Sequence record: LR756504.1
DNA: 64,000 nucleotides
Reading direction: 5' to 3' (one strand)
This document shows positions 1,145 to 62,520 of this stretch, one piece after another; the first letter of the stretch is position 1; each line of letters opens with the position of its first letter. A program made the position numbers and the translations under genes. The notes under the pieces are model-generated. The model saw only the letters and a program-made list of their open reading frames with translations. It searched no databases and had not been told where the DNA came from.

Positions 1145-1699
1145 ATGAATTTCTACTCAAATTTCGATGATTTTCTATTAGAGAAAAATGGATTTACACA
1201 CAATGTATTATTATATAAATTAAATATTCCTGGATGGGAAAATATTATAAACAGTATTGATAAAGAAGATATTTGGAAAATAGAGAATACAGAATTACCT
1301 GGTATACCAGGTGGTTATCAATTGTATCCACATGTTACTTTATTGTATAATTTAAGAAATACAAATATAAACAAAATTGGTTCATTAATAAGCACCTTAG
1401 AACCTATTAAATTTGAAATTAATGGTATAAATATATTTAGAACATCTAAGGGATACGATGTATTAAAAATGTCTGTTAAACCAACCGAAGAACTTCTTTA
1501 TATACATCAAATATTTAAGGATATTTTTCATACAAATTCTAATGATGATTATACACCACATATTACAATAGCATACTTAAAAGAAGGTACTGCTCTAAAA
1601 TATGTTGATTATGAATATAAAAATATTATTTATTCCGATACTATCATATACAGTCTAAAAAGTGGTTATCAACTCGAATTTAAAATTGATGCTAAATAA
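1145..1699 (+). CDS. 2H phosphoesterase (2'-5' RNA ligase / Acb1-like fold) with CTS-like N-terminus
   Basis: Two HxT motifs: YPHVTLLY and TPHITIAYLKEG; N-terminus MNFYSNFDDFLLEK. Confidence 0.85.
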   Translation: MNFYSNFDDFLLEKNGFTHNVLLYKLNIPGWENIINSIDKEDIWKIENTELPGIPGGYQLYPHVTLLYNLRNTNINKIGSLISTLEPIKFEINGINIFRTSKGYDVLKMSVKPTEELLYIHQIFKDIFHTNSNDDYTPHITIAYLKEGTALKYVDYEYKNIIYSDTIIYSLKSGYQLEFKIDAK

Positions 1700-1704
1700 G
1701 TAGC

Positions 1705-2160
1705 TTAATTATAAAGATTATCAATTCTCGATTTTCTATCAAGTTTTACACATCTTTCATCAAATTCTATACGCTCTAATCCTTCCAATAAATAAACAAT
1801 ACTAAAATTTTTAACTTTAATTTTAACTATTTTACCTTTTATATTATGATTGTATAATATGGCTATTACTCTATCATCAATTTTAAATTTGACGTTTCTC
1901 AGTAATCGTTTCTTGTGCTTTATGTTTATTATTGATGTAATTAAAATATCTATTGAAATTAATGGACCACTCAACATAAGTAATATATTATATTTACTAA
2001 ATAAATCATTTGTATCAAAATATTTAGATACTAAATACGTATTACTACAGTCATATAACATGTTAGTTAAAATAACACCTATCACAAACCAAAGCACACC
2101 TATTATAATAAAAATTATTGCTGTCGTTACTATTGTTTCCATTAAATTAAAAATTATCAA
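1705..2160 (-). CDS. Membrane protein with C-terminal RKSRIDNL tag
   Basis: Hydrophobic N-terminal segments, then a small basic domain. Confidence 0.75.
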   Translation of the reverse strand: MIIFNLMETIVTTAIIFIIIGVLWFVIGVILTNMLYDCSNTYLVSKYFDTNDLFSKYNILLMLSGPLISIDILITSIINIKHKKRLLRNVKFKIDDRVIAILYNHNIKGKIVKIKVKNFSIVYLLEGLERIEFDERCVKLDRKSRIDNLYN

Positions 2161-2464
2161 CTAATGTTATTTCTATTTTTAGTGCATCTTCTACTATACT
2201 TTTAATCCAATGATAACCAAATAGCGATTCTTTTGTTCCACATTTTTCTATAGCTTCTTTATGTGTTATAATATTAGAATTAACTGATTTATTTAGAATC
2301 ATATTTCTAAACATATAAAAATCAACAATATCTAACATATATTGTTTACTTTTTAAATAATCTTTAATTTCTTCATCTTGTTTAATGAAATTTAACATTT
2401 CATAATTTACTCTACCCCCTGATAAGAAGTATTTCCATTTAGAACTTTTTGTTAATGATTGCAT
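2147..2464 (-). CDS. Hypothetical protein
   Basis: 105-aa ORF overlapping the downstream gene start. Confidence 0.7.
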   Translation of the reverse strand: MQSLTKSSKWKYFLSGGRVNYEMLNFIKQDEEIKDYLKSKQYMLDIVDFYMFRNMILNKSVNSNIITHKEAIEKCGTKESLFGYHWIKSIVEDALKIEITLVDNF

Positions 2465-2514
2465 AATATAAACTATGTGGGAATATTATAAAATTTAATA
2501 TGAATGATATGATA

Positions 2515-2922
2515 TTAATCATTATTAGCTTTTTTAGCGTTTTTTACTTTATTAACAAAGAAATTTTTCATTCTTGACGATATGTGACCATCAAATCCAA
2601 TATCATCAACTTTTTTTGAATATTCTTGTAAAATTAATTTGTAAATATAAATTTTATTTTTAATATCGCTTTCAAAAATATCTTTAAATATAACATTAAA
2701 TGTTGCTAATAATTTTGATACCCTTTTATCAACAATAGCTTCTTTATTTAAAATATATAAGACTTTAAATTCTTTTTCGCTACCAAACGTACCAACCATC
2801 AATTTTTCCATTTTATCTTGTGGAATTTGAGGAGCAGGTTCAATATCAGGTTTTGTCGTATTGCTTACAGGCTTAACATTAGTTCTAATATTACCTTCTG
2901 TTAAATTTGATTTCTTACTCAT
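2515..2922 (-). CDS. Hypothetical protein (start revised to MSKKSNL)
   Basis: ATG at 2922 follows a class-2 promoter at 2945-2973; the longer ORF-track start overlaps the opposite-strand gene. Confidence 0.7.
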   Translation of the reverse strand: MSKKSNLTEGNIRTNVKPVSNTTKPDIEPAPQIPQDKMEKLMVGTFGSEKEFKVLYILNKEAIVDKRVSKLLATFNVIFKDIFESDIKNKIYIYKLILQEYSKKVDDIGFDGHISSRMKNFFVNKVKNAKKANND

Positions 2923-2944
2923 ATTAAGTGTTTTTATTATGTGT

Positions 2945-2973
2945 ATTATAGTTAAAATAAATCTAAATGTTTC
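2945..2973 (-). promoter_or_regulatory. Class-2 promoter AAAC(A/T)TTT-N14-TATAAT
   Basis: Minus strand GAAACATTT-14 nt-TATAAT. Confidence 0.55.
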
Positions 2974-3031
2974 AGATTTCATACTTTTTTTCAAAAAACA
3001 ATTTAATATATAACAAAAACCCATAAATAAC

Positions 3032-3340
3032 ATGATAAAAATTACAAGTACTGCTAATAAAACAATTACAGTTAGCGATAATGGAACAAATGGTACGAGT
3101 GGTACACCCATATCTTCTTTTATATGTTTAGGGATTGATTGTGAAGTTAAGGTTTTTGATGATAATGTTGATCAATTCAATTATAAATATAGAGTTTTAA
3201 GAACTGTCAATATTACAAACAAATTCACAAAACTTTTAATAGCTACTGTAAATGTAGAAACATTAGATACATCATCATCAAGCTATAGTTCAAATATGGA
3301 TACGTATGCCAATAATTTAATAAGTATTTTATACGCTTAA
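3032..3340 (+). CDS. Hypothetical late protein
   Basis: 102-aa ORF preceded by TAATATATA. Confidence 0.6.
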   Translation: MIKITSTANKTITVSDNGTNGTSGTPISSFICLGIDCEVKVFDDNVDQFNYKYRVLRTVNITNKFTKLLIATVNVETLDTSSSSYSSNMDTYANNLISILYA

Positions 3341-3357
3341 AATAAATTTTGTCAAAA

Positions 3358-3516
3358 ATGAAGAAATTTACTGACTACCAATTAGTTATAGAAAAAAAGG
3401 AAATAGAAAGAAAGAAATATTTAGAAGTAATTCACTTACCCGAATTATCAATAACAAAAGAATCACTTAATGAATACCTTAAACTATACAATCTAAAATT
3501 AGAAGAATTAAAATGA
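3358..3516 (+). CDS. Small protein with CTS-like N-terminus (not in ORF track)
   Basis: MKKFTDYQLVIEKKEIERKKYLEVIHLPELSITKESLNEYLKLYNLKLEELK*, ATGA overlap with 3513. Confidence 0.65.
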   Translation: MKKFTDYQLVIEKKEIERKKYLEVIHLPELSITKESLNEYLKLYNLKLEELK

Positions 3517-3731
3517 AATATTTAAAAACATTTGAGAATTACTATCACGATGTTCTGAATTATTATATCAAGAAGTCTGAAGTAGAAAAAGAGAAAGATG
3601 GTGGAGATGATAATGATGAAAATCTACCCGATGACTTACTCGATGATGATGAAATAGAAGTTAATGATGTAACTAAACCTTTAAAATATGATGTTAATAA
3701 TTCTATAAACATCTTTAACAATTTAATGTAA
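3513..3731 (+). CDS. Small acidic protein with CTS-like N-terminus
   Basis: MKYLKTFENY...; Asp-rich middle. Confidence 0.7.
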   Translation: MKYLKTFENYYHDVLNYYIKKSEVEKEKDGGDDNDENLPDDLLDDDEIEVNDVTKPLKYDVNNSINIFNNLM

Positions 3732-3732
3732 T

Positions 3733-3762
3733 AAAAAAGGGATTCAAACGAATCCCTTTTTT
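3733..3762. terminator. Bidirectional intrinsic terminator
   Basis: aaaaaagggattc-aaac-gaatccctttttt between convergent genes. Confidence 0.9.
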
Positions 3763-3764
3763 AT

Positions 3765-5891
3765 TTATTTAACTATTGTCATAGATATACTATCAGGAAC
3801 AAAATCATACTTAGAAAACGTCATATTAGGGACTGCTCTTCCAGATGTTAGAGTTCTTAATGATGTAATATAACCAAACAACATTGATAGTGGAACTGAT
3901 GCAGTAATAAGCTGAGTATTTCCTTTATTGTCAATATTCGTAATAGAACCTCTTCTCTTATTCAAATCACCAGATACAGACCCAATAAAATCATCAGGTG
4001 TAGTTACAACTACTTCCATGATAGGTTCTAATAATTTTGGTTTAGCTTGTTTAGAAGCTACTTTAAATCCTTCTTTTGCTGCTAATTCAAATGACAATGC
4101 ATCAGAATCCACATCATGATAAGAACCATGTATAAGTCTAATTTTCATAGATTCTACAGGATAGCCACCTAAAGGACCATTTTTCATAGCTTCTTCAAAT
4201 CCTTTTTGAATAGGTGTGATAAATTCTTTTGGAATTACTCCACCAACTATTTCATTAACGAATTCCAAACCTAATTTTCCATCTTCACGTGGACCAATTT
4301 CAAACACAATATCAGCAAATTTACCTCTACCACCAGTTTGTTTACTGAATACTTCTCTATGTTGAAACTTATTAGTTAAGGTTTCTTTGTACGCAACTAA
4401 AGGCGCACCTTGTTTTACCTCAACACCATGATCACGTTTCAATGTTTCAAGTCTAACTTCTAAGTGAAGCTCACCCATACCCCTTATTATAGTTTGACCA
4501 GTTTCTTTATCAGTATTTACTCTAAGAGATGGATCCTCTTCAACTAATTTAGAAAGAGCAATTCCCAATTTATCAGAATCCGCTTGACTTTTTGCTTCAA
4601 TCGCATAACCTATCACAGGCTCAGGAAAAGACATAGACTCTAAAACAACTTTGTTATCAATAACAAGTGTATCACCAGTTCTAATATTCTTTATACCGAT
4701 AAACGCAACTATATCACCTGCTTCTGCACTTTCAATTTGAATTTGCTTATTCGAGTGCATTTGTACAATTCTTGATACTCTTTCTTTAGTACCTGTTCTC
4801 ATATTAATAATATAAGAACCTGCATTAATATGACCAGAATAACATCTAACATAACACAACTTACCATATTGGTCAGTTGTTATCTTAAAAGCAAGTCCAG
4901 TAAATGGTCTACCAATCGCTGGAGTAATCTCAACTTCTTCATCAGTATCAGTATTTATACCCTTTGTGATCCTATCTTTAGGTGAAGGAAGATATGCACA
5001 TACAGCATCTATTACAGACTGAACACCTTTATTTTTAAAGGCAGAACCGCAAAGAACTGGAAATATTTTCATTTCAACAGTAGCCTTTCTGATAACAGAT
5101 TTCACTTCTTCTTCACTAATTTCTTGATTATCCAAATATTTTAGCATAAGTTCATCATCATATTCAGATAGAGTTTCTAATAAAGATTTTCTGTATTCAT
5201 TTACAGTTTCTACTATATCTGTCGGAATTTCAATTTCTCTATAAGTTTTACCTTCATCTTCAGTATTCCATAGAATACCTTTCATTGCAATTAAATCAAC
5301 TACCCCGATAAAACCATCTTCTGAACCAATTGGTATTTGTAATGGTATTGCATTCGCACCGAGTTTTTCTCTTATAGTTTTAACAGCCTTAAAGAAGTTA
5401 GCACCCGCTCTATCCATTTTATTAACAAAACATACTCTTGGAACACCATAACGATCAGCTTGTCTCCAAACAGTCTCAGACTGTGGTTCTACACCCGATA
5501 CAGCGCAAAATAGAGCAACTGCACCATCCAATACTCTAAGTGAACGTTCTACCTCAACTGTAAAGTCAACATGTCCTGGTGTGTCTATAATGTTAATATT
5601 ATAGGATTCACTATTTGGTATAAGTTCACCTTGTGTTGTTGGATAGTTCCAAAATACTGTAGTTGCAGCAGAAGTAATCGTAATACCTCTTTCTTTTTCT
5701 AAATCCATATGGTCCATTGTAGCACCCGCACCATCTCTATCATGTACTTCACCAATTTTGTGTGTTTTACCCGTATAATATAAAATACGCTCTGTTGTTG
5801 TAGTTTTACCAGCATCGATATGGGCCATAATTCCAACATTTCTAAGTAGTCCGAGTTCCTTACCTTTCCTACCTGTATCCGAATCTTTCAT
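3765..5891 (-). CDS. fusA: Translation elongation factor G
   Basis: G1 [11 protein letters not shown]2 RGITI, G3 DTPGH, G4 NKMD, domain [11 protein letters not shown]; 708 aa; not in an rpsL-rpsG operon. Confidence 0.98.
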
Positions 5892-5928
5892 TTTCTTTTT
5901 TTTTATTTTTTGGTTAATTTTTACAAAT

Positions 5929-5960
5929 AAAAAACCCTGAATTTTTTATGTTCAGGGTTT
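5929..5960 (-). terminator. Attenuator terminator upstream of fusA
   Basis: Minus strand AAACCCTGAA-9 nt-TTCAGGGTTT followed by a U-rich tract, 38 nt before the fusA ATG. Confidence 0.85.
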
Positions 5961-9369: not shown

Positions 9370-9750
9370 TTATTGTAATTTTATAATTAGTTCAACATCT
9401 TTATTTAGATAAGCTAATAGCATATTTTTAATTTTAGTATCATTTGTTATGGAATCATAAATGTTAACACCTGAACCACTTTCCATTGCTTCAATATCAT
9501 TTACTTCCCAACCATCTACGGAGAATTCTATTGATTTCAATTCTATTGATTCTTCTACACCACCATAAATTACAGATAATGTTTTTTTATTTTTGAAGTA
9601 TAGATAACGCTTATCTGGGTCAGAAATTTTATAAATAATTTTTAGAAAGTAATCCATAATTGGTGATACTACACCATCATCCGTTAAAATAGATAACATT
9701 TCATGTTCAAATCCAATTTTAACTAATACAATCTTACCATTTATATTCAT
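9370..9750 (-). CDS. Hypothetical early protein
   Basis: Host-type promoter 4 nt upstream of ATG. Confidence 0.75.
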   Translation of the reverse strand: MNINGKIVLVKIGFEHEMLSILTDDGVVSPIMDYFLKIIYKISDPDKRYLYFKNKKTLSVIYGGVEESIELKSIEFSVDGWEVNDIEAMESGSGVNIYDSITNDTKIKNMLLAYLNKDVELIIKLQ

Positions 9751-9846: not shown

Positions 9847-10419
9847 ATGTCAAATATTATAGAAGATAAAGATTATATATTGGTAAACATTGAAAACGCA
9901 AAATTCAATGTTGAAGGCATTTTAGAAAAAATGCTTGATAAATCTTATTTGAAATATAAAATTTTTAATAATAGATTTACTATCTTTTTTAAAGATGGTG
10001 GATTTTTTGGGCATGGTTTGAGTGAATTGATTAAGTATGCTGAAAATGATGGTACTTGGTATTCTAATACATGGAACTGTATTCTTGGTACAGAGCCATA
10101 TACAGGAAGATTGCGTTCTTTATATTATGATGAATTTGTATTTTTGCTTTCCGAAGATTTAATTCAATTTGATGATTTTGAGTTGTTGACTTCTGATGAT
10201 ATTTGGAAAAATTTTGATAATTATATTGAAGCTAAAGAAACTCCTTTCTTAAAATCTCTTATGGATTGTAAAAATAAAGCCGATTTAAGAAAGGAGTATA
10301 GAAAGCTTGTTATGGAATATCATCCTGATAAAACAGGTAGCGATAACGAGCAAATTAGACAAATTACAGCAACTTATTTGAGACTTGTAAAACAAGTTAA
10401 TAGTCTTAAAACATTTTAA
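9847..10419 (+). CDS. Protein with C-terminal J (DnaJ) domain
   Basis: DLRKEYRKLVMEYHPDKTG...IRQITATY; HPD motif. Confidence 0.85.
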   Translation: MSNIIEDKDYILVNIENAKFNVEGILEKMLDKSYLKYKIFNNRFTIFFKDGGFFGHGLSELIKYAENDGTWYSNTWNCILGTEPYTGRLRSLYYDEFVFLLSEDLIQFDDFELLTSDDIWKNFDNYIEAKETPFLKSLMDCKNKADLRKEYRKLVMEYHPDKTGSDNEQIRQITATYLRLVKQVNSLKTF

Positions 10420-14777: not shown

Positions 14778-15518
14778 ATGAAATATTTAAAGCTTTTTGA
14801 AGATTATTCTAACCCCATGTTAGAACAACGTAAAGATATGTTATCATTACGTAATAATTTAGATACTTATTTTAAAGAACATCATCCAGAATTAAAAATT
14901 ACGTTTGATATAAGAGGTGAATATCCAGAAGAATATTTAGGTGATTATATAGAAATTACTAGTGCAGATATTAAAATGACATTATCAACGACACATGAAG
15001 GTAAAATATTTGCTGATTATGGTGATGAAGATGATAGAGAAATATTTGATAAAACTGATGTTGATAATATAATATTTATGATAGAAGAACAATTTCGTGT
15101 TAATGAAAATGTTTCAGATTGGGACGATGAAGAGGAAGAGGAAGATGATTTAAGCATTATGTTTGAAACCATAGAATTAGATGATGATGCTATAGAATAT
15201 GGCTTTGAAAATGGTTATATATTTCACATTGGTAAAATCATAGATTATTTATCTAAACACGGTATAAATGGTGTACAAGTGAAAGATTTTAAAGGTAAAT
15301 CTATTGATACCGCTATGGGTGGGACTGACATTATTATTACAATTAAAATTCCAACTACAGATAAAGAAACTTTAATTAAAATAAAAAATGACTTGGAAAG
15401 ATTTGAATATTTTGAATCAGTAAAAATTACTAAAAATAGTATTAAAATATCGTATTCTGCGGATTCTATTTTGGTATATTTTCAACCTGAGATTTTTCTA
15501 AATGAACACGATTTATAA
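14778..15518 (+). CDS. Putative virion-internal protein, two modules
   Basis: MKYLKLFEDY; internal VNENVSDWDDEEEEEDDL; TTATATATA 4 nt upstream. Confidence 0.6.
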   Translation: MKYLKLFEDYSNPMLEQRKDMLSLRNNLDTYFKEHHPELKITFDIRGEYPEEYLGDYIEITSADIKMTLSTTHEGKIFADYGDEDDREIFDKTDVDNIIFMIEEQFRVNENVSDWDDEEEEEDDLSIMFETIELDDDAIEYGFENGYIFHIGKIIDYLSKHGINGVQVKDFKGKSIDTAMGGTDIIITIKIPTTDKETLIKIKNDLERFEYFESVKITKNSIKISYSADSILVYFQPEIFLNEHDL

Positions 15519-15746
15519 TCCATTTTTAAGTATTCTAAGCTTTCTATTTAGAATACTAATTCTATCTTTGTTTCCAATCATTCTCCCACGAATATTTTCT
15601 CTATATCCATAAGAAGCTCCTTTAGCTATATTTAAATGAAAACTATCTGATATAAATTTTTCAGTTAATAGTTTAATCTCTTTATTAATACACTTAATTT
15701 CAGATATATTAATAATATGGTAATATAAATTAAGAATTTTTTTCAT
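15513..15746 (-). CDS. Hypothetical protein
   Basis: 77-aa ORF overlapping upstream gene. Confidence 0.65.
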   Translation of the reverse strand: MKKILNLYYHIINISEIKCINKEIKLLTEKFISDSFHLNIAKGASYGYRENIRGRMIGNKDRISILNRKLRILKNGL

Positions 15747-16032
15747 TTATTTTACTTATCCAATTTAATCTAACTTGTTCAACAAATACTCTAAATTTAG
15801 TATAATTTTCATTATATGCAAAATCAGAACCTTTTTTAACACCTTGAAATTCAAAATATTCAAAGAAGAATGAATCACACAATTTATCCAATCTTAGAAA
15901 AATTCCATGATTTGCATATGAACCATTATCAGGATTTATAAACCAATTATTAAAATTTGTCACATTAAATATCTCTTCTATACTTTTTATAGAAGTTTTA
16001 TTTTGTGATTTTTTAAACAGATTTTTAAACAT
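15730..16032 (-). CDS. Hypothetical early protein
   Basis: Host-type promoter 4 nt upstream. Confidence 0.75.
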   Translation of the reverse strand: MFKNLFKKSQNKTSIKSIEEIFNVTNFNNWFINPDNGSYANHGIFLRLDKLCDSFFFEYFEFQGVKKGSDFAYNENYTKFRVFVEQVRLNWISKINEKNS

Positions 16033-18745: not shown

Positions 18746-19003
18746 ATGAATAGAAAACTTATATCTAATAATATAATTAATTCGGAACTATTCGATGATA
18801 TGACTTGGGATGGAATTGATTGTGATGAATTCTGTAGTTGTAATTGTTGTGTTTACTGTATCAATGATAGAATATCATATGAAGCATTTATATATGATGA
18901 TTGGTTGGATTCAAATTTAAGAAAAAGAAAAATATCTTGGTTTATTGGCGAACCAAACACATTAGAAAATATTTCTAAAATGAAAAATGATGAAAGAGAA
19001 TGA
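18746..19003 (+). CDS. Cys-rich hypothetical protein
   Basis: CDEFCSCNCCVYC cluster; RKRKISWF near C-terminus. Confidence 0.7.
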   Translation: MNRKLISNNIINSELFDDMTWDGIDCDEFCSCNCCVYCINDRISYEAFIYDDWLDSNLRKRKISWFIGEPNTLENISKMKNDERE

Positions 19004-19241
19004 AATTATTTTTTACAAAAGCGGTGATAAAACGTATCTATCGGTTGAAGTTAAATACCAAATATATAGATTAAGGCAGAGTATTGAATATTGGGTGATT
19101 GGTTTGCCTAAAAATAATAAAAAATTAATTAAAACTGATAAAGGAAATCTTTTAGCATATAAAAGCTTAATTGATATAGAAAAAGATTTTGAAACTATAC
19201 ATCAAAGACGTAAAAGAATATCTGATGATTTAATACAATAA
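18987..19241 (+). CDS. Hypothetical protein with C-terminal RRKRISD motif
   Basis: 84-aa ORF ending at a terminator. Confidence 0.7.
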   Translation: MMKENEIIFYKSGDKTYLSVEVKYQIYRLRQSIEYWVIGLPKNNKKLIKTDKGNLLAYKSLIDIEKDFETIHQRRKRISDDLIQ

Positions 19242-25145: not shown

Positions 25146-25394
25146 TTAATTTATTTTTTCAAATCTATCTTCAATTAAATTAATTGCTTGATTATCAGAT
25201 AAGTATAAAAGTTCTTCTATACTGATTCTTAAATCACTATTTTTTAAATCCATTTCTAATTGTTCTGATGCTATTTCATATGCATCTTCAAATGGATAAC
25301 CTTTTGGAAATAATGCTATATTTACTGTATCATGCTGTTTTTTTATTTGTTCTGCACGAATTTTAAGGTAAATTTGCTTATGTTTATCTTCCAT
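25146..25394 (-). CDS. Hypothetical early protein
   Basis: TTTG-20 nt-TAACTTTG-taat-ATG (25399-25430). Confidence 0.75.
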   Translation of the reverse strand: MEDKHKQIYLKIRAEQIKKQHDTVNIALFPKGYPFEDAYEIASEQLEMDLKNSDLRISIEELLYLSDNQAINLIEDRFEKIN

Positions 25395-45706: not shown

Positions 45707-46867
45707 ATGAATATTTTAAAAGACATAAATAACATTGATGGAATTAAAGCTTTAACAGCTAAAGGTGGTGAAATTTTTCTTGTTGGTGGTATAGTTAGAG
45801 ATTCATTTTTGAATAAAGAGTCTAAAGATATAGATTTAATAGTAAGATTATTAGAAATAGATGTTATTGAAAAAATACTATTGCCTCATGGTTTTGTTAA
45901 AAAAGATGTTGGTAAATCTTTTAGTGTAATCAAATTTATTCCCAAAGGATGGACTAAAGAACCAATTGACATTGCTTTACCTAGAACAGAAAAAAAGATT
46001 GATATTGGACATAAAGGCTTTAAAATTGACGCAAATCCATTTCTTGAAATCGAAGAGGATTTAATTCGCCGTGACATAACGATAAACTCTATTGCTATAT
46101 CATTAAAAGATGGAAGAGTGATTGATCCGTTTAATGGTATTTCTGATATTAAAAATAAACTCATTAAAGCCACATCTAATCAATCTTTTATAGAGGATCC
46201 ATTAAGAATTCTCAGAGTAATTCAATTTGCTTCTCGCTTTGATTTTGATATTGAAGATGAAACATTTGATCTTATTTTAAAAAATGTTCAATCTTTAGAT
46301 GAAATAAGCGGAGAAAGAATTACTACCGAACTTGATAAAATTTTCACAAAAGGAGACATTCAAAAAGGATTTAAACTTTTAAAAGACTCTAAAGTTCTTA
46401 AACAAATAACAGGCTCAGAACCTATTGACTTTCAATTAGATTCAAAAATAACACGCTCAGAATTCTTCTTCTTATTATTTCAAGGTTCTCATTCTCCCGA
46501 ATCAATATTTGAAAAAAGATTGAATGGTGATGTTGATACCATAAAAGGAATCAAAGCTTTGAATATTTTCAGAAATAAATTTACAACAGATTTATCAGAA
46601 ATTGAAAAAAGATTTCTGATGGTAGAACTTATTACTAAATCTAACGATGTTTTAAATTTTTCAATTTTAAAAGGATTGGAGACTGAAATAACACAATTTA
46701 GAAATAAAGAATTTCCATCTAAAATTACAGATTTAGCTATTAATGGTGATATTTTAATGAACAAAGGATTAAAAGGTAAAGAAATTGGTGATAAATTAAA
46801 ACTTTTATTATTCGAAGTTCTACAAGGAAAAAAGAAAAACATTATAGAAGATTTATTAAATGATTGA
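45707..46867 (+). CDS. cca: Class II tRNA nucleotidyltransferase (CCA-adding/poly(A) polymerase family)
   Basis: FLVGGIVRD...KDIDL, EEDLIRRDITINSIA, EDPLRILRVIQFASRF; no HD domain seen. Confidence 0.9.
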   Translation: MNILKDINNIDGIKALTAKGGEIFLVGGIVRDSFLNKESKDIDLIVRLLEIDVIEKILLPHGFVKKDVGKSFSVIKFIPKGWTKEPIDIALPRTEKKIDIGHKGFKIDANPFLEIEEDLIRRDITINSIAISLKDGRVIDPFNGISDIKNKLIKATSNQSFIEDPLRILRVIQFASRFDFDIEDETFDLILKNVQSLDEISGERITTELDKIFTKGDIQKGFKLLKDSKVLKQITGSEPIDFQLDSKITRSEFFFLLFQGSHSPESIFEKRLNGDVDTIKGIKALNIFRNKFTTDLSEIEKRFLMVELITKSNDVLNFSILKGLETEITQFRNKEFPSKITDLAINGDILMNKGLKGKEIGDKLKLLLFEVLQGKKKNIIEDLLND

Positions 46868-48359: not shown

Positions 48360-48701
48360 ATGAGTAAATATTTATCATATTCCGAAAATTTTAAACAATT
48401 AGTTAAAGGTGATTTTATAGTACTTGAATGTATGGATGAAATTCCAGATAAAGCATTTCCCATACAAAAAAGTACTATTCAAAAATGGACAGTATCACAA
48501 TCCGATGCTAAAGGGTTTACCATGTCCCGTAAAATTAAAGGACTTCCAAAGCAAACAATCACGATGTATAATATATTCATTAAAGATAATATATTCATTT
48601 CTTTCCAATCAATGTTTATGCCTTATAATTGTAATTTTAAGGTGTCTATTCAAAAAAAGAGCGATAAAGTTAATACATTAAAAACATTATTCAATAGATA
48701 A
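48360..48701 (+). CDS. Hypothetical early protein
   Basis: 113-aa ORF behind a host-type promoter. Confidence 0.75.
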   Translation: MSKYLSYSENFKQLVKGDFIVLECMDEIPDKAFPIQKSTIQKWTVSQSDAKGFTMSRKIKGLPKQTITMYNIFIKDNIFISFQSMFMPYNCNFKVSIQKKSDKVNTLKTLFNR

Positions 48702-56651: not shown

Positions 56652-58589
56652 TTAACTCAAATCATGTTTATAAACTCTTACATACCATTCAACTATTAAT
56701 TGAATCTGTCTCTTAGTATATCCCAAGTTTTCCATTCTTGATATGAAGCTTTCGTGTTTCTTCTTATCATCAGTGCTATTTTTAGGTGAGAAAGAAATAA
56801 CAGGTAGCAAATCTTCTGTATTAGTGAAAATTCTCTTTTCTATAACAGTTCTTATTTTTTCAAAAGCATTCCATTTTGGAGATTTACCACTATTATTTGC
56901 TCTATATCTGTATGTAAAATTAACAGTTTCATGTCTGAAATCTTTAGGATTTACAATACCTGCTGGTTTCTCCATTTTCTCTAATTCCGAATTAAGAGTT
57001 TCTCTATTCATCATAGCATTAGTTTCAGGATCTCTAAAATCATTATCTTGAATCCAATTATCAGCATAAGCAACATATCTTTCAAATAGATTTTGACCAT
57101 AATCAGAATAAGATTCAACATAAGCTCTTTGAATTTCATTACCAATATATTGAACGTAATCAGAAACAATATGTGTTTTTAGATAATCTAAATATTTACC
57201 TTCTACTTCTTTTGCTAATTGTAATTTTTGCACTTCTTTTTCCAACACATAAAATAAATGAATTGGGTTAGCAGAAATTTCATGTTGATCATAATTAAAT
57301 ACTTTAGATAGAACTTTATAAGCAAAACGTGTTGATAAACCATTCATACCTTCATTCAAACCTGCATAATCTTTATATTCTTGTAATGATTTTGCTTTTG
57401 GATCTTTATCTTTTAAATTCTCACCATTATATACTCTAAGCTTAGAAAAAATATTCGAATTCTCAGGCTCAACCAAACGAGTCATGATAATAAACTTAGC
57501 AAGTAAATCAAGTGTCTTTGGTGCGCAAGACGCTTTTGATAATGATGAGTGTGCCAAAATCTTTTCGTAAATTTTTACTTCTTCATCAACACGTGAACAA
57601 TATGGTACTCTTACTACGTTAATACGATCTAAGAAAGCTTCATTCTTCTTATCTCTTACAAAGAGCTCCCATTCTGACTCATTCGAATGGGCCATGATAA
57701 TACCCTGGTATGGAATTGCGGGTAGCCCTTCAGTTCCTTTAAAATTTCCTTCTTGTGTTGCAGTTAATAATGGATGTAACGTTTTAATTGGAGCTTTAAA
57801 CATCTCAACAAACTCTAAGATTCCTTGGTTTGCTCTACACAAGCCGCCAGAATATGAATAGCAATCAGGATCATCTTGACTGAAATGTGCAAGTTTTCTA
57901 ATATCTACTTTACCAACAAGAGATGATATATCAGAATTGTTTTCATCACCTGGTTCTACTTTTGCTATTCCAACTTGATGTTGAATACTTGGATACATTT
58001 CAATTACTTTTATTTTAGATAAATCATAATCAATTTCATCTAATCTTTTAGTAAGCCACGGAGACATACAAGATGGAATATATCTTTTATTAATTCCGTA
58101 TTCATCCAATAACATTTTAGAATCTTCATCTGATGAGAAAATACCAAATGGTGATTCAAATACAGGTGATGTTTCTTCACCAACTTTAACCACATAAATA
58201 GGACATTTTTCCATCAAGCTTTTTATTTTCTCAGCTAAAGAAGATTTACCACCACCAACTGGACCCAAAAGATATAGAACTTGTTTCTTTTCTTCCAGGC
58301 CTTGTGAAGCATGTCTAAAGAAACCAACAATTTGTTCTATAGTATCTTCCATACCATAAAATTCTCTAAAAGCTGGATATCTTTTGATAATTTTATTGAA
58401 GAATAATCTAGATAATCTAGGATCATCTTTGGTATCTATAGTTTCTTCACTACCTATTGCTTCCAATAACCTCTCAGCAGGAAGCGAATACCATTTGTCT
58501 GATTTCTTACACAAGTCCAAATATTCTAGCAATGAAAATTCTTTTGGTACATGTAAGTGACGATTTTTGTAGTCTTTTAGTATTGACAT
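56652..58589 (-). CDS. prkA: PrkA/YeaG-family AAA+ ATPase
   Basis: Walker A GPVGGGKS, YSYSGGLCRANQGILEFVEMFKAP, C-terminal DLLPVISF...RMENLGYT. Confidence 0.96.
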   Translation of the reverse strand: MSILKDYKNRHLHVPKEFSLLEYLDLCKKSDKWYSLPAERLLEAIGSEETIDTKDDPRLSRLFFNKIIKRYPAFREFYGMEDTIEQIVGFFRHASQGLEEKKQVLYLLGPVGGGKSSLAEKIKSLMEKCPIYVVKVGEETSPVFESPFGIFSSDEDSKMLLDEYGINKRYIPSCMSPWLTKRLDEIDYDLSKIKVIEMYPSIQHQVGIAKVEPGDENNSDISSLVGKVDIRKLAHFSQDDPDCYSYSGGLCRANQGILEFVEMFKAPIKTLHPLLTATQEGNFKGTEGLPAIPYQGIIMAHSNESEWELFVRDKKNEAFLDRINVVRVPYCSRVDEEVKIYEKILAHSSLSKASCAPKTLDLLAKFIIMTRLVEPENSNIFSKLRVYNGENLKDKDPKAKSLQEYKDYAGLNEGMNGLSTRFAYKVLSKVFNYDQHEISANPIHLFYVLEKEVQKLQLAKEVEGKYLDYLKTHIVSDYVQYIGNEIQRAYVESYSDYGQNLFERYVAYADNWIQDNDFRDPETNAMMNRETLNSELEKMEKPAGIVNPKDFRHETVNFTYRYRANNSGKSPKWNAFEKIRTVIEKRIFTNTEDLLPVISFSPKNSTDDKKKHESFISRMENLGYTKRQIQLIVEWYVRVYKHDLS

Positions 58590-58696
58590 AATTAAATCTT
58601 TAAATATTTTTTGTTTGCACTTTTACTTTTATTAAAAAAAGTGAAAATGTTTGAAAAATATGTATTAAAAAATTAAGTTTTCCTAATATATACTAT

Positions 58697-59095: not shown

Positions 59096-59141
59096 AAATA
59101 TTACTACACGTTTAATATATACAAAAAACATTAACTAAATA

Positions 59142-59426
59142 ATGAAATATTTAAAGAAATATAACACTTTTTTAAATGAAAATAAAAGTGAGTCTAAAAT
59201 CGAAGATGTACTAAGTCTTCAGAAAAGTATACATACTAATAAATATCATACTTACTCTAAAGATGAATTGTGTAATATGGGCGAAAAAGAGTTGGATGAT
59301 ATAATATTAGATTTAAAGGCTGTTGTAGCATCAATAGGAGAAGAAGATAGTAATTTCATACAAAGTCCATACAATCCAAATTTACCATCAGAAATAGCAT
59401 CAGGTAAAATAGAAAATGGACTGTAG
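59142..59426 (+). CDS. Putative virion-internal protein (CTS-like N-terminus)
   Basis: MKYLKKYNTFLNEN; TAATATATA at 59113-59121. Confidence 0.65.
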   Translation: MKYLKKYNTFLNENKSESKIEDVLSLQKSIHTNKYHTYSKDELCNMGEKELDDIILDLKAVVASIGEEDSNFIQSPYNPNLPSEIASGKIENGL

Positions 59427-59448
59427 TCTATAAAAAATAACTCTTTTT

Positions 59449-61992
59449 GTGAAAAGAATAAAATCGTTTAGAGATTACAATTTGCTTTTAGAAAAATTGA
59501 AATTAAGTGAAGTTAGAAACTTAGTTAAAAATTGGAAAGAGGCTGGTGGTGATAAAAGATATGATGAAATATTTAAAGGTAAGCATAGAATACTTATCCC
59601 ATTCCAACCTATGGTATCACCTATTCAAATACAAGTACTTAAATTTTTAAAGGAACATGGATATGTGGATATTGATTATATTGAAGGTAATTGTAAAGAT
59701 TCTAAAAACCCAAATCAACAACCAAAAATTAGCAAGATTTTAGCAAGATTTAATCCAGAATTAAAATCTAAATATGATAATGATAGAGAAAAAGCTAAAC
59801 GCGCACAAGGAGATTTAACTATAGTTGTATCTAGACATGCTTATGATATTGCATCAATGACCACTGATAGAAAGTGGCATAATACATCATGTATGGAGTT
59901 TAGAACAGGTTCTAATAGAACTTACGTCACTAATGATGTTATGGAAGGCTCTTTAGTAACATATTTAATTAATAAGTCAGATAAAAATATTGAACATCCT
60001 TTAGCTAGACTTCTAATAAAACCATTCGTTAGTACTGATGATGGTAAAGTTATTTTATGGACAGAAGATAGAATATATGGTGATAATGTTAATGGATATA
60101 AAGAAAGTGTTGAAAAATGGCTAAGAAATATTCAACCAAATATTGTCGGTAATTTTAGACTTCATCATAAACTTTATTCTGATAGTAGTACTGATAGAAC
60201 TTTCTATCAATGGTTTAATGATTATGATGATGTGTATAAAAATACCTATAATGATATATTTTTTGTATATAAAGATGGTAAATGTGGCATGGTTAATAAA
60301 TATAATGATATTATAATACCATTAATATATGATAATATCATTGAAACCATATACGGTGGTACTATAATGATATGTATAAAAGACGGTAAGTATGGATTAA
60401 TTAATAATAGAGGTGAAATAATTTTAGAATGTGATTATGATAGTATTGATATTCCTAACGATAGTTATGATTATCTTATTCTTTTAAAGAAAAATAGAAA
60501 ATATGGATTTATTAAATTAAATGGTAATGGTAATGGTAATATATTACTTAAAACAGAACCAATGTATGAATTCTTAGAATACATAACAGGTACTAAGTAT
60601 TTAATATTCAGAGATAATGGTAAATATGGTATAATCAATATGAATAACACTATATTACTACCACCTACTTATGATAAAATTTCAAAAAATTATTCATTTA
60701 AAATTGGTGATAAAATTGGTTTATTAGATAGAGATACATTTAAGAGTGAAGTAATTATAGATTCTTCTATAGCCGATGAAATTAAATATAAATGGGGTGA
60801 TGATTTCGCAATTCAAAAAAATGAAAAAATTGGATTAATATCCGCTGATGGTAAAATTCTTATTCCTTGTGAGTATAATAAATTCGCAAATTATAGAGAT
60901 ATTAATAATGGTATTGTTATAGTTTTAAAAGATGATATGTATGGAATTTATTCTTGTAACGATATGAAAGAATTATTACCGTGTGAGTATATAAACATAA
61001 CTGATAGTAAAAATAATACATTCCTTATTCAAAATAGTTCCGAGAAATGGGGAGTATTCACTAACTATAAAATAATTGTACCATGTAAATATACATCATT
61101 GGATATGAGAAATTATCCTATGGCACAAGCATATCTAAGTACTACGGATAATGAACAGACTATAAATGTATTAACTGGTAAAATTGCTAATATTAAAATT
61201 CAAAATATAATAAACAATGATGCTGTTATATTTACTAATTCTAATAATACTGAAAATAAATATGGCGTTTGTAATAAAAACTTAGATATTATAATTCCTG
61301 ATAAATGGTATTACATTCAATATTTTCAATCATTCGCATCAATTTATGATAAACCATGTTTCAAAGTTTATAAAACTGATGATACATTCGGTATAATGAC
61401 TATCGATAATGAATTCATATTACCATGTGAATACAGTCAAATACTAAAAATAACAAATGGTGTTTTTTCACTTAAAAATTCTACTAGTAAGAAATGTAAA
61501 TTAATTAAATTACCAAGTTGTGAAACTATTTTAGATTATAAATTTGATTCTATCAGAGGTAATGGTAATGATAGCGAAAAGATATTTATAGTTGGTGAAA
61601 ATAATAAATATTCATTATTTAATACTGAAACAAAAGAAATAACAAATAAATATGATGATATATCATTATTTTTAAATGATAAAGCATCTTTTTATAAAGG
61701 AATAACGTATAGCAATATAGAATATGTGAAATTATTAATGTTTAAAAATAATAAATTTATAGAATCTATAAACACTTATCAACATATACAACCTTTATCA
61801 GTTAGAAACAATAGAATTGTATTTGTATTTTGTTTTACAACTGATAAAATTGCATTGAGAGATATTTACGATAATGAAGGTAATCTATTATTTAAAAATT
61901 GTTTTGATATTCAAGTTAATGATAATTTTATAACAATTAAACAAAACGAAGGAGATGAACCAATTCAATATAAAATTGATGATTTATTATAA
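59449..61992 (+). CDS. WG-repeat protein with CTS-like N-terminus and an unassigned N-terminal domain
   Basis: GTG start MKRIKSFRDYNLLLEK; more than 8 K(Y/W/C/I)G(L/I/V)...G.II.P..Y..I repeats. Confidence 0.8.
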   Translation: MKRIKSFRDYNLLLEKLKLSEVRNLVKNWKEAGGDKRYDEIFKGKHRILIPFQPMVSPIQIQVLKFLKEHGYVDIDYIEGNCKDSKNPNQQPKISKILARFNPELKSKYDNDREKAKRAQGDLTIVVSRHAYDIASMTTDRKWHNTSCMEFRTGSNRTYVTNDVMEGSLVTYLINKSDKNIEHPLARLLIKPFVSTDDGKVILWTEDRIYGDNVNGYKESVEKWLRNIQPNIVGNFRLHHKLYSDSSTDRTFYQWFNDYDDVYKNTYNDIFFVYKDGKCGMVNKYNDIIIPLIYDNIIETIYGGTIMICIKDGKYGLINNRGEIILECDYDSIDIPNDSYDYLILLKKNRKYGFIKLNGNGNGNILLKTEPMYEFLEYITGTKYLIFRDNGKYGIINMNNTILLPPTYDKISKNYSFKIGDKIGLLDRDTFKSEVIIDSSIADEIKYKWGDDFAIQKNEKIGLISADGKILIPCEYNKFANYRDINNGIVIVLKDDMYGIYSCNDMKELLPCEYINITDSKNNTFLIQNSSEKWGVFTNYKIIVPCKYTSLDMRNYPMAQAYLSTTDNEQTINVLTGKIANIKIQNIINNDAVIFTNSNNTENKYGVCNKNLDIIIPDKWYYIQYFQSFASIYDKPCFKVYKTDDTFGIMTIDNEFILPCEYSQILKITNGVFSLKNSTSKKCKLIKLPSCETILDYKFDSIRGNGNDSEKIFIVGENNKYSLFNTETKEITNKYDDISLFLNDKASFYKGITYSNIEYVKLLMFKNNKFIESINTYQHIQPLSVRNNRIVFVFCFTTDKIALRDIYDNEGNLLFKNCFDIQVNDNFITIKQNEGDEPIQYKIDDLL

Positions 61993-62520
61993 ATTAAATT
62001 TAATATTAGAACCATCCACTCTTGAGTAAACCATTTTAAAAACATCTATAGATAAAGAACTGATTATAGACTCATATTTTTTAGCTGTTCCCTTTTTTAA
62101 ATAAGCTATTGTAATGTGTGGATTATACGGAAATTGTAATGTATGTTCAAATGTATCTCTACAATCTTTGTTCAATCCTGTTAATGAATCAGAACTAACT
62201 TCAAATTTTAATACATCAAATTCTTCATTTTCAAAACAAGAAAGTTTATTAATATTTATTACAAAAGTTTTATAATTACTTATCAATTCTTTTAATATAT
62301 CTATATCTACTTTATCATCATGGAAACCATATAAAACACTTACATGTGGTTTAATAACTACACCATACCCATCTTCCTTATAAATATCCTCTGGCAAAAT
62401 ATTATCTTGTACATATTTTAATGTAGGTACTATGCTATCTACAATAGCCATTAGACAAGAATATTTATATACCTTCTCTATACCATCACCACATTTACAA
62501 TAACCTTTAAACTCTCCCAT
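61987..62520 (-). CDS. Second 2H phosphoesterase (start revised to MGEFKGY)
   Basis: KPHVSVLYG and NPHITIAYLKKG; paralog of 1145..1699. Confidence 0.85.
   Translation of the reverse strand: MGEFKGYCKCGDGIEKVYKYSCLMAIVDSIVPTLKYVQDNILPEDIYKEDGYGVVIKPHVSVLYGFHDDKVDIDILKELISNYKTFVININKLSCFENEEFDVLKFEVSSDSLTGLNKDCRDTFEHTLQFPYNPHITIAYLKKGTAKKYESIISSLSIDVFKMVYSRVDGSNIKFNL

What the first reader, a model, noticed from the sequence alone, without database searches (positions are those of the whole stretch)
1145..62520. Two 2H phosphoesterases apparently deployed at different times (packaged vs early)
Seen: paralogs 1145..1699 (HVT/HIT) and 61987..62520 (HVS/HIT) share PHITIAYLK(E/K)GTA-KY. The first has a late motif and CTS-like tag; the second has a near-consensus host-type TATCTTTTG-taat-ATG and no tag. 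Established: T4 gp57B/Acb1 is a 2H phosphoesterase that degrades CBASS cyclic nucleotides; other 2H enzymes act in RNA end repair. Inference: one copy is injected and the other made early, giving two-stage anti-signalling or RNA-repair coverage.
Basis: partly seen in the sequence, partly recalled or inferred. Interest (0 to 1): 0.65.

Follow-up and report, generated by a model that had tools for sequence, protein, structure and literature searches.

The report
Two 2H phosphoesterases, one capsid-tagged
A 636-kb soil phage carries two distant copies of a 2H phosphoesterase; one has a late promoter and a T4-like capsid-targeting tag, so it may be loaded into the virion, but the claim that the other copy is made early from a host-type promoter does not hold up.

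Summary
Window 1145-1699(+) (A) and 61987-62520(-) (B) are the only two 2H phosphoesterase genes in the 636,363-bp phage record LR756504.1. They share 31% identity, both keep the two catalytic motifs, and both give confident 2H folds.

A's N-terminus, F7-D-D-F10-L-L-E13, fits a tag that starts at residues 5-8 in 20 proteins against 1.4 expected. The same pattern picks out only IPII, IPIII and gp61.1 in T4.

The "early, host-type" reading of B fails:
- Its TATCTTTTG lies inside the upstream gene.
- It is off register and has no -33 element.
- It scores below every true member of the class.
- It is lost in the two closest relatives.

B is instead the second cistron of a conserved NT5C-like phosphatase-2H pair (TAAtATG), behind a late-type motif.

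The two copies therefore probably differ in destination, partner and substrate, not in timing. The substrate (cyclic-oligonucleotide signals or RNA 2',3'-cyclic-phosphate ends) is unresolved. Packaging is an inference, not shown.

The parts
1145..1699 (+). Gene A: 2H phosphoesterase, 184 aa (HVT63-65, HIT139-141). The 2H core is residues ~18-184.
   Evidence: AlphaFold2 pLDDT 85.7. Best structural match Z 13.9, and most chains align from model residue 18.
1145..1183 (+). N-terminal tag of A, MNFYSNFDDFLLE|K. It has an aromatic pair F7/F10, then L11 and E13. It resembles a T4 capsid-targeting propeptide with a putative cleavage site after E13.
   Evidence: The pattern [FY]..[FY][LIVMF].E starts at residues 5-8 in 20 proteins against ~1.4 expected. 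The T4 control finds IPII, IPIII and gp61.1 only. Residues 1-17 are low-confidence and lie outside the fold.
1133..1140 (+). Late-class promoter core AATATATA, 4 nt upstream of A's ATG. This spacing implies a leaderless or near-leaderless mRNA.
   Evidence: Spacers of 4-5 nt are a sharp peak, 48 genes. A's upstream scores 16.1 with the class matrix (A itself is in the training set); only one ATG in the genome reaches that score. The same core precedes the head, portal and sheath genes.
1126..1133 (-). Mirror late-class core TATATATA, 4 nt upstream of the divergent gene 693-1121(-). It overlaps A's core by one base within the 23-nt intergenic region.
   Evidence: score 15.1.
693..1121 (-). Divergent neighbour, 142 aa, starting MKYLKLFEDFSEDWDEEEEE. 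It is a tagged acidic protein with no Pfam match.
61987..62520 (-). Gene B: 2H phosphoesterase, 177 aa (HVS, HIT). The N-terminus MGEFKGYCKCGDGIEK is disordered in the model and conserved in the orthologues.
   Evidence: AlphaFold2 pLDDT 89.2, with residues 1-15 below 50. Best structural match Z 15.1.
62522..62944 (-). NT5C-like HAD phosphatase, 140 aa, with a DLDDT motif. It is the first cistron of the conserved pair. Its stop codon lies 1 nt before B's ATG (TAAtATG).
   Evidence: PF06941 at 50.5 bits. The same 1-nt junction occurs in L042 and L044. No terminator was found between the two genes.
62952..62959 (-). Late-type core AATATATA, 7 nt upstream of the NT5C-like ATG. It is the only promoter-like element for the NT5C-like/B pair.
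   Evidence: The 88% relative has the canonical 4-nt spacer.
62525..62533 (-). It is coding sequence of the NT5C-like gene (Y L L) and is judged a chance resemblance.
   Evidence: Matrix score -3.1 against a member minimum of 5.4, and no -33 element. The TTTG becomes TTTA and AATG in the two relatives.

Best explanation
A and B are two old, non-sister members of a 2H (HxT/S x2) phosphoesterase clade found in phages of Bacteroidota and in related huge phages. The clade sits between LigT-type 2',3'-cyclic phosphodiesterases and Acb1-type cyclic-oligonucleotide nucleases.

Gene A:
- It is a stand-alone gene behind a late-class promoter, WATATATA 4 nt from the ATG, so the mRNA is probably leaderless.
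- Its product starts with a ~13-residue propeptide, F7xxF10-L-x-E13. At least 20 other unrelated late proteins carry the same propeptide, and it matches the targeting (aromatic i, i+3) and processing (aliphatic i+4, Glu i+6) determinants of the T4 capsid-targeting sequence.
- The inferred mechanism is that A is recruited into the prohead core, trimmed after E13 by the phage head-maturation protease, and delivered with the DNA.

Gene B:
- It is the translationally coupled second cistron of a conserved NT5C-like HAD phosphatase-2H pair, probably transcribed from a late-type motif upstream of the phosphatase gene.
- It most likely acts in the cytoplasm together with the phosphatase. The 2H enzyme would leave a 2',3'-cyclic or terminal phosphate, and the phosphatase would remove it.

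The two copies therefore differ in destination, partner and probably substrate, not in early versus late timing.

Status of each step:
- Shown: homology, catalytic motifs, fold, both promoter classes, tag statistics, operon conservation.
- Inferred: late timing, leaderless starts, packaging, cleavage, substrate.

Promoter classes:
- WATATATA peaks at a 4-5 nt spacer (48 genes) and at 16-26 nt (92 genes). TAnnTTTG peaks at 4 nt (19 genes) and at 16-20 nt.
- WATATATA precedes the tail sheath (phrog_34521), the major head protein (phrog_138), the portal (phrog_213) and the largest ORFs.
- The TAnnTTTG class precedes a CCA-adding enzyme, a ClpX-like ATPase, a DNA ligase and RNA ligases.
- WATATATA is depleted genome-wide (361 found, ~853 expected naively). 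Of those, 44% lie within 30 nt upstream of a called start.
- The leaderless and leadered forms share the same core, T-A-ATATATA.

Tag:
- 20 proteins carry it at residues 5-8 against ~1.4 expected.
- It is associated with the late class (Fisher p 3e-6 and 4e-9) and occurs in 0 of 71 host-type genes.
- The 67 tagged proteins fall into 65 similarity clusters once residues 1-20 are removed.
- In the T4 control the pattern hits 3 of 249 ORFs, two of them the known capsid-targeted proteins IPII and IPIII.
- In T4, residues 4 and 7 target the protein and residues 8 and 10 govern processing (PMC9026906).
- A head-maturation protease is present (phrog_207, 114 bits).
- The single-copy orthologues in two other ~640-kb phages also start with the tag (MKLKKYKQFIKE, MIKKYLEFMKE); the LR745206 copy has its own WATATATA motif 4 nt from the ATG, while the LR756502 copy follows two tagged genes behind one.

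Gene B:
- The TAAtATG junction is kept in the 88% and 67% relatives, while the TTTG is not.
- A late-type motif lies upstream of the NT5C-like gene.
Against: - There are no transcript, proteome or enzymatic data. The only public run holding the locus is the soil DNA library it probably came from.
- 'Late' is inferred from which genes share the motif.
- The NT5C-like motif has an off-peak 7-nt spacer in this genome, and an internal promoter for B cannot be excluded.
- The tag's aromatic pair is at residues 7/10, not 4/7 as in T4.
- The T4-type protease Pfam model (PF03420) scores only 24.7 bits, below its cut-off.
- N-terminal extensions of viral 2H enzymes can be substrate lids: PDE-9 residues 1-15 and the penguinpox phosphodiesterase.
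- Structure comparison does not separate Acb1-like from LigT-like.
- T4 Acb1 scores 202 bits on the Acb1 model, against 29.6 for A and 20 for B.
Confidence: 0.5

Rival explanations
1. B is transcribed early by host RNA polymerase from a leaderless host-type promoter (TATCTTTTG-taat-ATG), while A is late and injected. Together they would give two-stage coverage.
For: - TTTG-N4-ATG is a real architecture in this genome. 20 called starts have it, and the spacers taat or tatt are typical.
- B's proximal 16 nt are in the top 2.1% of all ATG contexts.
Against: - 19 of the 20 true members have exact TAnnTTTG. B has one extra base.
- B has no -33 TTTG at the ~20-nt spacing.
- The matrix scores are -3.1 (16 nt) and -25.2 (45 nt), against member minima of 5.4 and 6.3.
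- The string encodes Y-L-L of the upstream gene and changes to TTTA and AATG in the 88% and 67% relatives. The 1-nt stop/start junction is invariant.
Confidence: 0.1
2. The N-terminal extensions are substrate lids of the enzymes, not packaging signals. Both copies are cytoplasmic, and two copies exist because they cleave different nucleotide messengers (substrate partition).
For: - N-terminal lids are shown for phage PDE-9 (residues 1-15) and for the penguinpox cGAMP phosphodiesterase. Substrate range differs widely among viral 2H enzymes (bioRxiv 10.1101/2025.08.21.671373).
- A residues 6-17 and B residues 3-18 lie within the aligned range against closed-lid PDE-9, 9q2g.
- At the positions aligned to the Acb1 stacking residues Y12/W74/F107/W147, B keeps aromatics while A has H and N at two of them.
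Against: - The same N-terminal motif sits on at least 20-60 proteins that share nothing else. It tracks the late promoter class. A lid specific to 2H enzymes does not explain either fact.
- The two readings are not exclusive.
Confidence: 0.2
3. Rival on function. The enzymes heal RNA ends. They would open the 2',3'-cyclic phosphates left by host anticodon nucleases, the NT5C-like HAD phosphatase would remove the phosphate, and the phage's RNA ligases would seal the break.
For: - B's best structural matches are LigT-type cyclic phosphodiesterases: 1iuh Z 15.1, 5h7e Z 14.9, E. coli LigT Z 14.2.
- B passes the LigT_PEase cut-off, 24.8 bits against 23.3.
- The genome encodes Rnl1-like and Rnl2-like RNA ligases, an AAA_33 kinase and a CCA-adding enzyme.
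- The 2H-HAD pairing recalls the HAD phosphatase domain of T4 Pnkp (my own knowledge).
- Maribacter phage Colly_1 has a 'Swiss Army Knife RNA repair' HAD gene 4 kb from its 2H gene.
Against: - Neither 2H gene is near a ligase or the kinase.
- No RtcB and no Tpt1 were found.
- The motif-2 context DDYTPHIT in A is identical to T4 Acb1. The family profile aligns to T4 Acb1 at 86% probability and hits FBB1 Acb1 at E 8e-5.
- The sister phage fuses the 2H domain to an RNase_T-type exonuclease, which suits the degradation of small oligonucleotides.
Confidence: 0.35
4. The 'tag' is not an address. It would be a nucleotide-level or translational feature of the first codons of late, leaderless mRNAs, or a remnant of common ancestry.
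For: - Many tagged genes are leaderless late genes.
- The genome is 26% G+C, so synonymous variation is uninformative.
Against: - The tag is equally frequent on leadered late genes (22 of 92) and absent from leaderless host-type genes (0 of 24).
- Substitutions are conservative at the protein level: F/Y, L/I/V/M, D/E/N/Q.
- There is no similarity beyond residue 20.
- The tag occurs on orthologues in other phages.
Confidence: 0.08

Closest known systems
T4 Acb1 (gp57B) and the Acb1 family (PF23474; PDB 7T26/7T27, and 9Q2G/9Q2Y, deposited as Acb1)
   Same: - 2H fold with an HxT/HxT tetrad.
- A's motif-2 context DDYTPHIT(I/L)(A/S)Y is nearly identical to T4's.
- An aromatic residue sits at the W74 position in both copies.
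- An aromatic residue lies near the C-terminus where the Acb1 lid has W147.
- A passes the Pfam cut-off (29.6 bits against 27).
- The highest identity in structural alignments is to Acb1, at 18-20%.
   Different: - These are very distant: T4 Acb1 scores 202 bits on the same model, and B scores only 20.
- The core is ~160 aa, against 137-152 for Acb1.
- The family has its own motifs, FDVLK and AYLKKGTAKKY.
- A lacks the Y12 and F107 equivalents.
- There is an N-terminal extension.
- Acb1 is not known to be delivered in the virion.
LigT/ThpR-type 2',3'-cyclic phosphodiesterases (E. coli LigT 5LDM, T. thermophilus 1IUH, D. radiodurans 5H7E)
   Same: - Similar size and topology.
- They are the best structural matches for B (Z 14-15) and tied best for A (Z 13).
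- PF02834 is marginally passed by B.
   Different: - Identity is 10-18%.
- PF02834 is failed by A (20 bits against 23.3).
- The genes are phage-borne, and the genomic context holds no ligase.
T4 capsid-targeting sequence of internal proteins IPI/IPII/IPIII (MKTYQEFIAE, MKTFKEF...)
   Same: - An N-terminal position.
- An aromatic pair three residues apart, followed by an aliphatic residue and a Glu two positions later.
- It sits on unrelated cargo proteins.
- The genes are late.
- A head-maturation protease is present.
   Different: - The register is shifted by about 3 residues (7/10 instead of 4/7).
- The consensus is MK.(L/I)K.F.(D/E/N)F(L/I)NE.
- The number of carriers is far larger (20-60).
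- The host phylum and phage lineage are different.
- Neither packaging nor cleavage has been shown.
Viral 2H phosphodiesterases with N-terminal lids (phage BCSR5 PDE-9; penguinpox cGAMP phosphodiesterase 9BKQ)
   Same: - A disordered N-terminal segment of ~15 residues precedes the 2H core.
- Structural matches are Z 11-13.
   Different: Here the segment carries a motif shared with dozens of proteins that are not 2H enzymes.

Membership tests
2H phosphoesterase superfamily | Two H-x-T/S motifs | tested here: met
   A has HVT63-65 and HIT139-141. B has HVS and HIT. H63, H139 and T141 are invariant in the 17-sequence alignment A3, which includes T4 Acb1; in the 22-sequence alignment A1, H139 and T141 are invariant and H63 nearly so.
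2H phosphoesterase superfamily | Profile match above the curated cut-off, and the 2H fold | tested here: met
   PF13563 scores 41.8 and 40.8 bits against a cut-off of 27. AlphaFold2 pLDDT is 85.7 and 89.2, and structural Z is 13-15 to several 2H structures.
Acb1 (PF23474) | Profile score at or above the gathering cut-off of 27 bits | tested here: inconclusive
   A scores 29.6 (passes, but below its PF13563 score). B scores 20 (fails). The T4 control scores 202 bits.
Acb1 (PF23474) | Nucleobase-stacking aromatics (Y12, W74, F107, W147) and a C-terminal lid | tested here: inconclusive
   By MAFFT alignment, B has Y, F, F, F and A has H, F, N, F. The alignment is of low identity and was not checked in three dimensions.
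Acb1 (PF23474) | [quoted passage not shown] | not testable with these tools
   Needs enzymology.
LigT/ThpR cyclic phosphodiesterase (PF02834) | Profile score at or above 23.3 bits | tested here: inconclusive
   A scores 20.0 (fails). B scores 24.8 (passes marginally).
T4-type capsid-targeting propeptide | An N-terminal aromatic pair (i, i+3), an aliphatic residue at i+4 and Glu at i+6 | tested here: met
   A has F7, F10, L11 and E13. The pattern is enriched about 14-fold at residues 5-8. In T4 it finds only IPII, IPIII and gp61.1. B has only the aromatic pair F4/Y7.
T4-type capsid-targeting propeptide | A prohead protease that cleaves after Glu | tested here: inconclusive
   A head-maturation protease is present (phrog_207, 114 bits). 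The T4 gp21 Pfam model scores 24.7 bits, below its cut-off of 27. Its specificity is unknown.
T4-type capsid-targeting propeptide | The protein is found, processed, inside the capsid | not testable with these tools
   The phage is uncultured, and no proteome or RNA run is available.
Bacteroidota sigma-A-type promoter (claimed for B) | Exact TAnnTTTG with a -33 TTTG about 20 nt upstream, conserved in relatives | tested here: not met
   B has TAnnnTTTG and no -33 element. It scores -3.1 and -25.2, against member minima of 5.4 and 6.3. The TTTG is lost in L042 and L044.
Late promoter class of this phage (claimed for A) | WATATATA 4-5 nt (or 16-26 nt) upstream of the ATG, shared with virion genes | tested here: met
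   A has AATATATA-cttt-ATG, scoring 16.1 with the class matrix (A is in the training set); only one ATG in the genome reaches that score. The head, portal and sheath genes carry the same core.

The most novel reading that the evidence does not exclude
Huge phages of the Mahaphage type may use a T4-like N-terminal address, MK.(L/I)K.F.(D/E/N)F(L/I).E, to load dozens of unrelated late proteins into the capsid. One of them would be an Acb1-related 2H phosphodiesterase. A ready-made enzyme that destroys nucleotide signals would then enter the cell with the DNA, while a second, untagged copy works in the cytoplasm with a phosphatase partner.
Probability: 0.3. Interest if true: 0.8.

Novelty: new variant of a known kind. 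Interest (0 to 1): 0.55.

Why it matters
- If the tag really directs encapsidation, it gives a sequence rule for predicting the injected proteome of uncultured huge phages.
- Gene A would then be the first case of an Acb1-like enzyme delivered pre-made. That would change how early a phage can blunt CBASS, type III CRISPR or similar signalling.
- The two promoter classes, each with a leaderless and a leadered form, give a way to sort about 200 genes of a 636-kb genome into temporal classes from sequence alone.
- The conserved 2H/HAD-phosphatase pair, and the 2H/RNase T fusion in a sister phage, suggest a multi-step route for destroying nucleotides or oligonucleotides. This can be tested in vitro.

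Tried and rejected
- The sigma-70 consensus scan and the terminator scan around both genes gave counts equal to the shuffles, so they were uninformative. No terminator lies between the NT5C-like gene and B.
- A single-sequence search of PDB sequences found nothing for either protein. Only the family profile reached 2FYH, Acb1 (7T26) and 1VDX.
- PADLOC gave no hits for A, B or the NT5C-like protein.
- Structure searches in PDB and BFVD confirm the 2H fold but cannot rank Acb1, LigT and Usb1 against each other. All scores are tied within Z 10-15.
- The maximum-likelihood tree of 26 family members is a near-polytomy. A is a long branch that is not sister to B, so a recent in-genome duplication is not supported and the order of events is unresolved.
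- The Pfam T4 prohead protease model was sub-threshold. PHROGs was needed to find the protease.
- A Pfam scan of ten tagged proteins gave little. One is FMN-reductase-like, one is methyltransferase-like, and one DegT aminotransferase is a false positive of the pattern.
- Literature searches for the tag strings and for BCSR5 returned nothing.
- The window's own assembly is not held. I rebuilt the phage genome in the script box from 34 loci of LR756504.1 for the statistics. Gene calls there are crude (first ATG of the longest ORFs, 904 ORFs), so counts are approximate.
- I did not run the big representative search, the complex prediction or the protein atlas, because no claim here rests on them.

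Full report
**Source and setting**

The window is bases 62,001-126,000 of LR756504.1, an unannotated 636,363-bp "uncultured phage" record. It has about 26% G+C, densely packed genes on both strands, and no tRNA genes in the window. The only public run that holds the locus is a soil metagenome DNA library, which may be its source. No RNA run was found. Stop-codon usage (TAA 691, TGA 123, TAG 90) and 90% coding density fit the standard code.

**Observation**

Both ORFs exist as described.
- Gene A is 1145-1699(+), 184 aa, with HVT63-65 and HIT139-141.
- Gene B is 61987-62520(-), 177 aa, with HVS and HIT.
- They are 31% identical (E 1e-15) and share PHITIAYLK(E/K)GTA.KY.
- Both pass Pfam PF13563 (41.8 and 40.8 bits; cut-off 27).
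- On the Acb1 model A scores 29.6 bits (cut-off 27) and B scores 20. On LigT_PEase A scores 20 and B scores 24.8 (cut-off 23.3).
- They are the only two copies in the 636-kb record.
- B's true start is the MGEF codon. The gene calls for the 88%- and 67%-identical orthologues start there, and the upstream extension is not conserved.

**Fold**

- The AlphaFold2 models are confident: A has pLDDT 85.7 and B has 89.2. Each has a disordered N-terminal 15-18 residues ahead of the 2H core.
- Structural comparison gives Z 13-15 to Usb1, YjcG, LigT, plant and Deinococcus cyclic phosphodiesterases. It gives Z 10-13 to Acb1, phage PDE-9 and the penguinpox cGAMP phosphodiesterase.
- These scores are effectively tied once chain length is considered, so the fold does not name the substrate.
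- The family profile reaches 2FYH (E 3e-5), FBB1 Acb1 (E 8e-5) and PH0099 (E 2.6e-4) in PDB sequences. It aligns to T4 Acb1 at 86% probability over the second motif.
- A's DDYTPHIT is identical to T4's.
- T4 Acb1 itself scores 202 bits on the Acb1 model, so A and B are at best remote relatives of it.

**Relatives**

- Homologues come from other huge phage records, at one copy each (LR745206, LR756502, LR756508, LR756511), from Maribacter phages, and from metagenomic contigs with T4-like neighbours such as sheath, gp19, baseplate and topoisomerase II genes.
- The tree is a near-polytomy. B groups with its two orthologues (100/100). A is a long branch that is not sister to B. They are paralogues in the loose sense, not a recent duplication.

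**Promoter classes**

I rebuilt the genome from 34 loci and called 904 ORFs crudely. Two upstream motifs are sharply placed.
- TAnnTTTG lies 4 nt from the ATG in 19 genes, with a second peak at 16-20 nt.
- WATATATA lies 4-5 nt from the ATG in 48 genes, with a broad second peak at 16-26 nt (92 genes).

The first class also has a -33 TTTG about 20 nt upstream. That is the Bacteroidota sigma-A architecture (from my own knowledge of that promoter type). It precedes a CCA-adding enzyme, a ClpX-like ATPase, DNA ligase, and Rnl1-like and RLIG1-like genes.

The second class precedes the tail sheath, major head protein, portal and the largest ORFs.
- It is depleted genome-wide (361 found, ~853 expected naively), and 44% of copies sit within 30 nt upstream of a start.
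- The leaderless and leadered forms share the same core, T-A-ATATATA, with an A-rich start region about 5 nt downstream.

I therefore read WATATATA as the late, phage-specific class and TAnnTTTG as the host-polymerase class. This is an inference from gene content.

**Gene A**

- AATATATA (1133-1140), cttt, ATG is a canonical member of the late class.
- Its upstream scores 16.1 with the class matrix (A itself is in the training set); only one ATG in the genome reaches that score.
- The divergent neighbour 693-1121(-) has the mirror motif in the same 23-nt spacer.

**The tag**

A begins MNFYSNFDDFLLE|K.
- The pattern [FY]..[FY][LIVMF].E starts at residues 5-8 in 20 proteins, against about 1.4 expected from interior rates. 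An aromatic pair starts at residue 7 in 52 proteins, against 9 expected.
- Tagged genes are enriched in the late class (13/48 and 22/92; Fisher p 3e-6 and 4e-9). None occur among the 71 host-type genes.
- With residues 1-20 removed, 67 tagged proteins form 65 similarity clusters. The tag is therefore a module on unrelated proteins.
- In T4 the capsid-targeting sequence is MKTYQEFIAE. Residues 4 and 7 target the protein and residues 8 and 10 govern processing (PMC9026906).
- The same ORF caller and pattern applied to T4 return only IPII, IPIII and gp61.1 among 249 ORFs.
- A head-maturation protease is encoded next to the major head gene (phrog_207, 114 bits). The T4 gp21 Pfam model is sub-threshold at 24.7 bits.
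- The single-copy orthologues in LR745206 and LR756502 also begin with the tag (MKLKKYKQFIKE|S, MIKKYLEFMKE|S). The LR745206 copy has its own late motif 4 nt from the ATG; the LR756502 copy follows two tagged genes behind one. Several metagenomic homologues carry the tag too.
- Packaging and cleavage after E13 are thus a reasonable inference, not a result.
- A competing reading is that the segment is a substrate lid, as shown for PDE-9 residues 1-15 and the penguinpox enzyme. That would not explain the same motif on dozens of other proteins, though the two readings can coexist.

**Gene B**

- The TATCTTTTG string (62533-62525) lies within the last codons of the NT5C-like gene 62522-62944(-). 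That gene's TAA stop is 1 nt from B's ATG.
- Against matrices built from the 19 true members, B scores -3.1 over the proximal 16 nt (member minimum 5.4; 2.1% of all ATGs do as well). It scores -25.2 over 45 nt (member minimum 6.3; 23% of ATGs do as well). It has TAnnnTTTG and no -33 element.
- In the 88% relative the TTTG is TTTA, and in the 67% relative it is AATG. TAAtATG is invariant in all three.
- Upstream of the NT5C-like gene there is AATATATA with a 7-nt spacer here and the canonical 4-nt spacer in the 88% relative.
- No terminator separates the two genes.
- B is therefore best read as the second cistron of a conserved phosphatase-2H pair in the late-type class.
- B's N-terminus MGEFKGYCKC is conserved in its orthologues and has an aromatic pair at residues 4/7, like the T4 targeting sequence and like T4 Acb1's own MMEFKDF. 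It lacks the aliphatic-x-Glu site.

**Function**

For signal degradation:
- Sequence affinity to Acb1 around motif 2.
- Aromatics at the positions aligned to the Acb1 stacking residues in B.
- The LR745206 orthologue is fused to an RNase_T-type exonuclease.
- Published 2H-HAD fusions exist in phages.

For RNA end healing:
- LigT-type best structural matches.
- Rnl1-like and Rnl2-like ligases, an AAA_33 kinase and a CCA-adding enzyme elsewhere in the genome.
- The HAD partner.

Against RNA end healing:
- No gene linkage to the ligases.
- No RtcB or Tpt1.

I put signal degradation slightly ahead (about 0.45 against 0.35). The matter needs enzymology.

**Verdict**

The features claimed for A are real and statistically strong. 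The early, host-type reading of B is not supported. The most likely picture is one virion-addressed late copy and one operon-embedded late-type copy with a phosphatase partner. The enzymes themselves are new members of a known superfamily. The T4-like address tag on an Acb1-related enzyme in a huge phage is a new variant worth testing.

Noticed in passing
whole genome; window examples 9370-9750(-), 9847-10419(+), 15730-16032(-), 25146-25394(-), 48360-48701(+): Two promoter classes each occur in a form 4-5 nt from the ATG and a form ~16-26 nt away. This implies widespread leaderless mRNAs. In the host-type class, many members carry a TTTGTAT...ATACAAA palindrome between the -33 and -7 elements, which may be an operator.
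   Followed up: partly
window 1122-1144: A 23-nt divergent intergenic region holds two overlapping late-class cores, 1126-1133 on the minus strand and 1133-1140 on the plus strand. Each is 4 nt from its own ATG.
   Followed up: yes
window 693-1121(-), 14778-15518(+); genome-wide: There are many proteins beginning MKYLKLFE(D/N)(F/Y). Several continue into long Asp/Glu runs (SEDWDDEEEE). They have no Pfam match, and most sit behind late-class motifs.
   Followed up: partly
T4 NC_000866: 73952-74410 (57B), 73591-73878 (ipI), 18966-19130 (61.1): T4 Acb1 begins MMEFKDFSTG, with aromatics at residues 4 and 7 as in the capsid-targeting sequence, and it lies directly next to ipI. The 54-aa gp61.1 begins MKTFKEFIKE, a full match to the targeting pattern. 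I do not know whether either protein is packaged.
   Followed up: no
L045 (LR745206.1) 2959-4275: The single 2H gene of this 635-kb phage is a 438-aa fusion. It consists of the tag, the 2H domain and a C-terminal RNase_T/DEDD exonuclease (PF00929, 31.8 bits).
   Followed up: partly
BFVD hits: 2H-like domains occur inside 880-1100-aa actinophage proteins annotated 'capsid morphogenesis protein' or 'structural protein'. They may be precedents for virion-borne 2H enzymes. I judged this by annotation names only.
   Followed up: no
window 3765-5891(-), 45707-46867(+), 56652-58589(-), 59449-61992(+), 63031-63726(+): The window also encodes an elongation-factor-like protein (phrog_6880) and a CCA-adding or poly(A) polymerase enzyme behind a host-type promoter. 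The orthologue of the 645-aa protein carries PrkA domains. There is an 847-aa WG-repeat protein starting MKRIKSFRDYNLLLEK, and a vWA protein.
   Followed up: partly
genome 163745-165586(-), 192855-194807(+): Large HNH/homing-endonuclease genes (phrog_3339, phrog_559) lie within the virion gene region, one next to the tail sheath gene and one near the head genes.
   Followed up: no
G001 (IMG/VR record, 288,572 bp, inverted terminal repeats): A shorter viral record shares 56% of the window's sampled words and holds a single match to the 2H model, in a 209-aa open frame like gene B's. Its relation to the 636-kb record was not examined.
   Followed up: no
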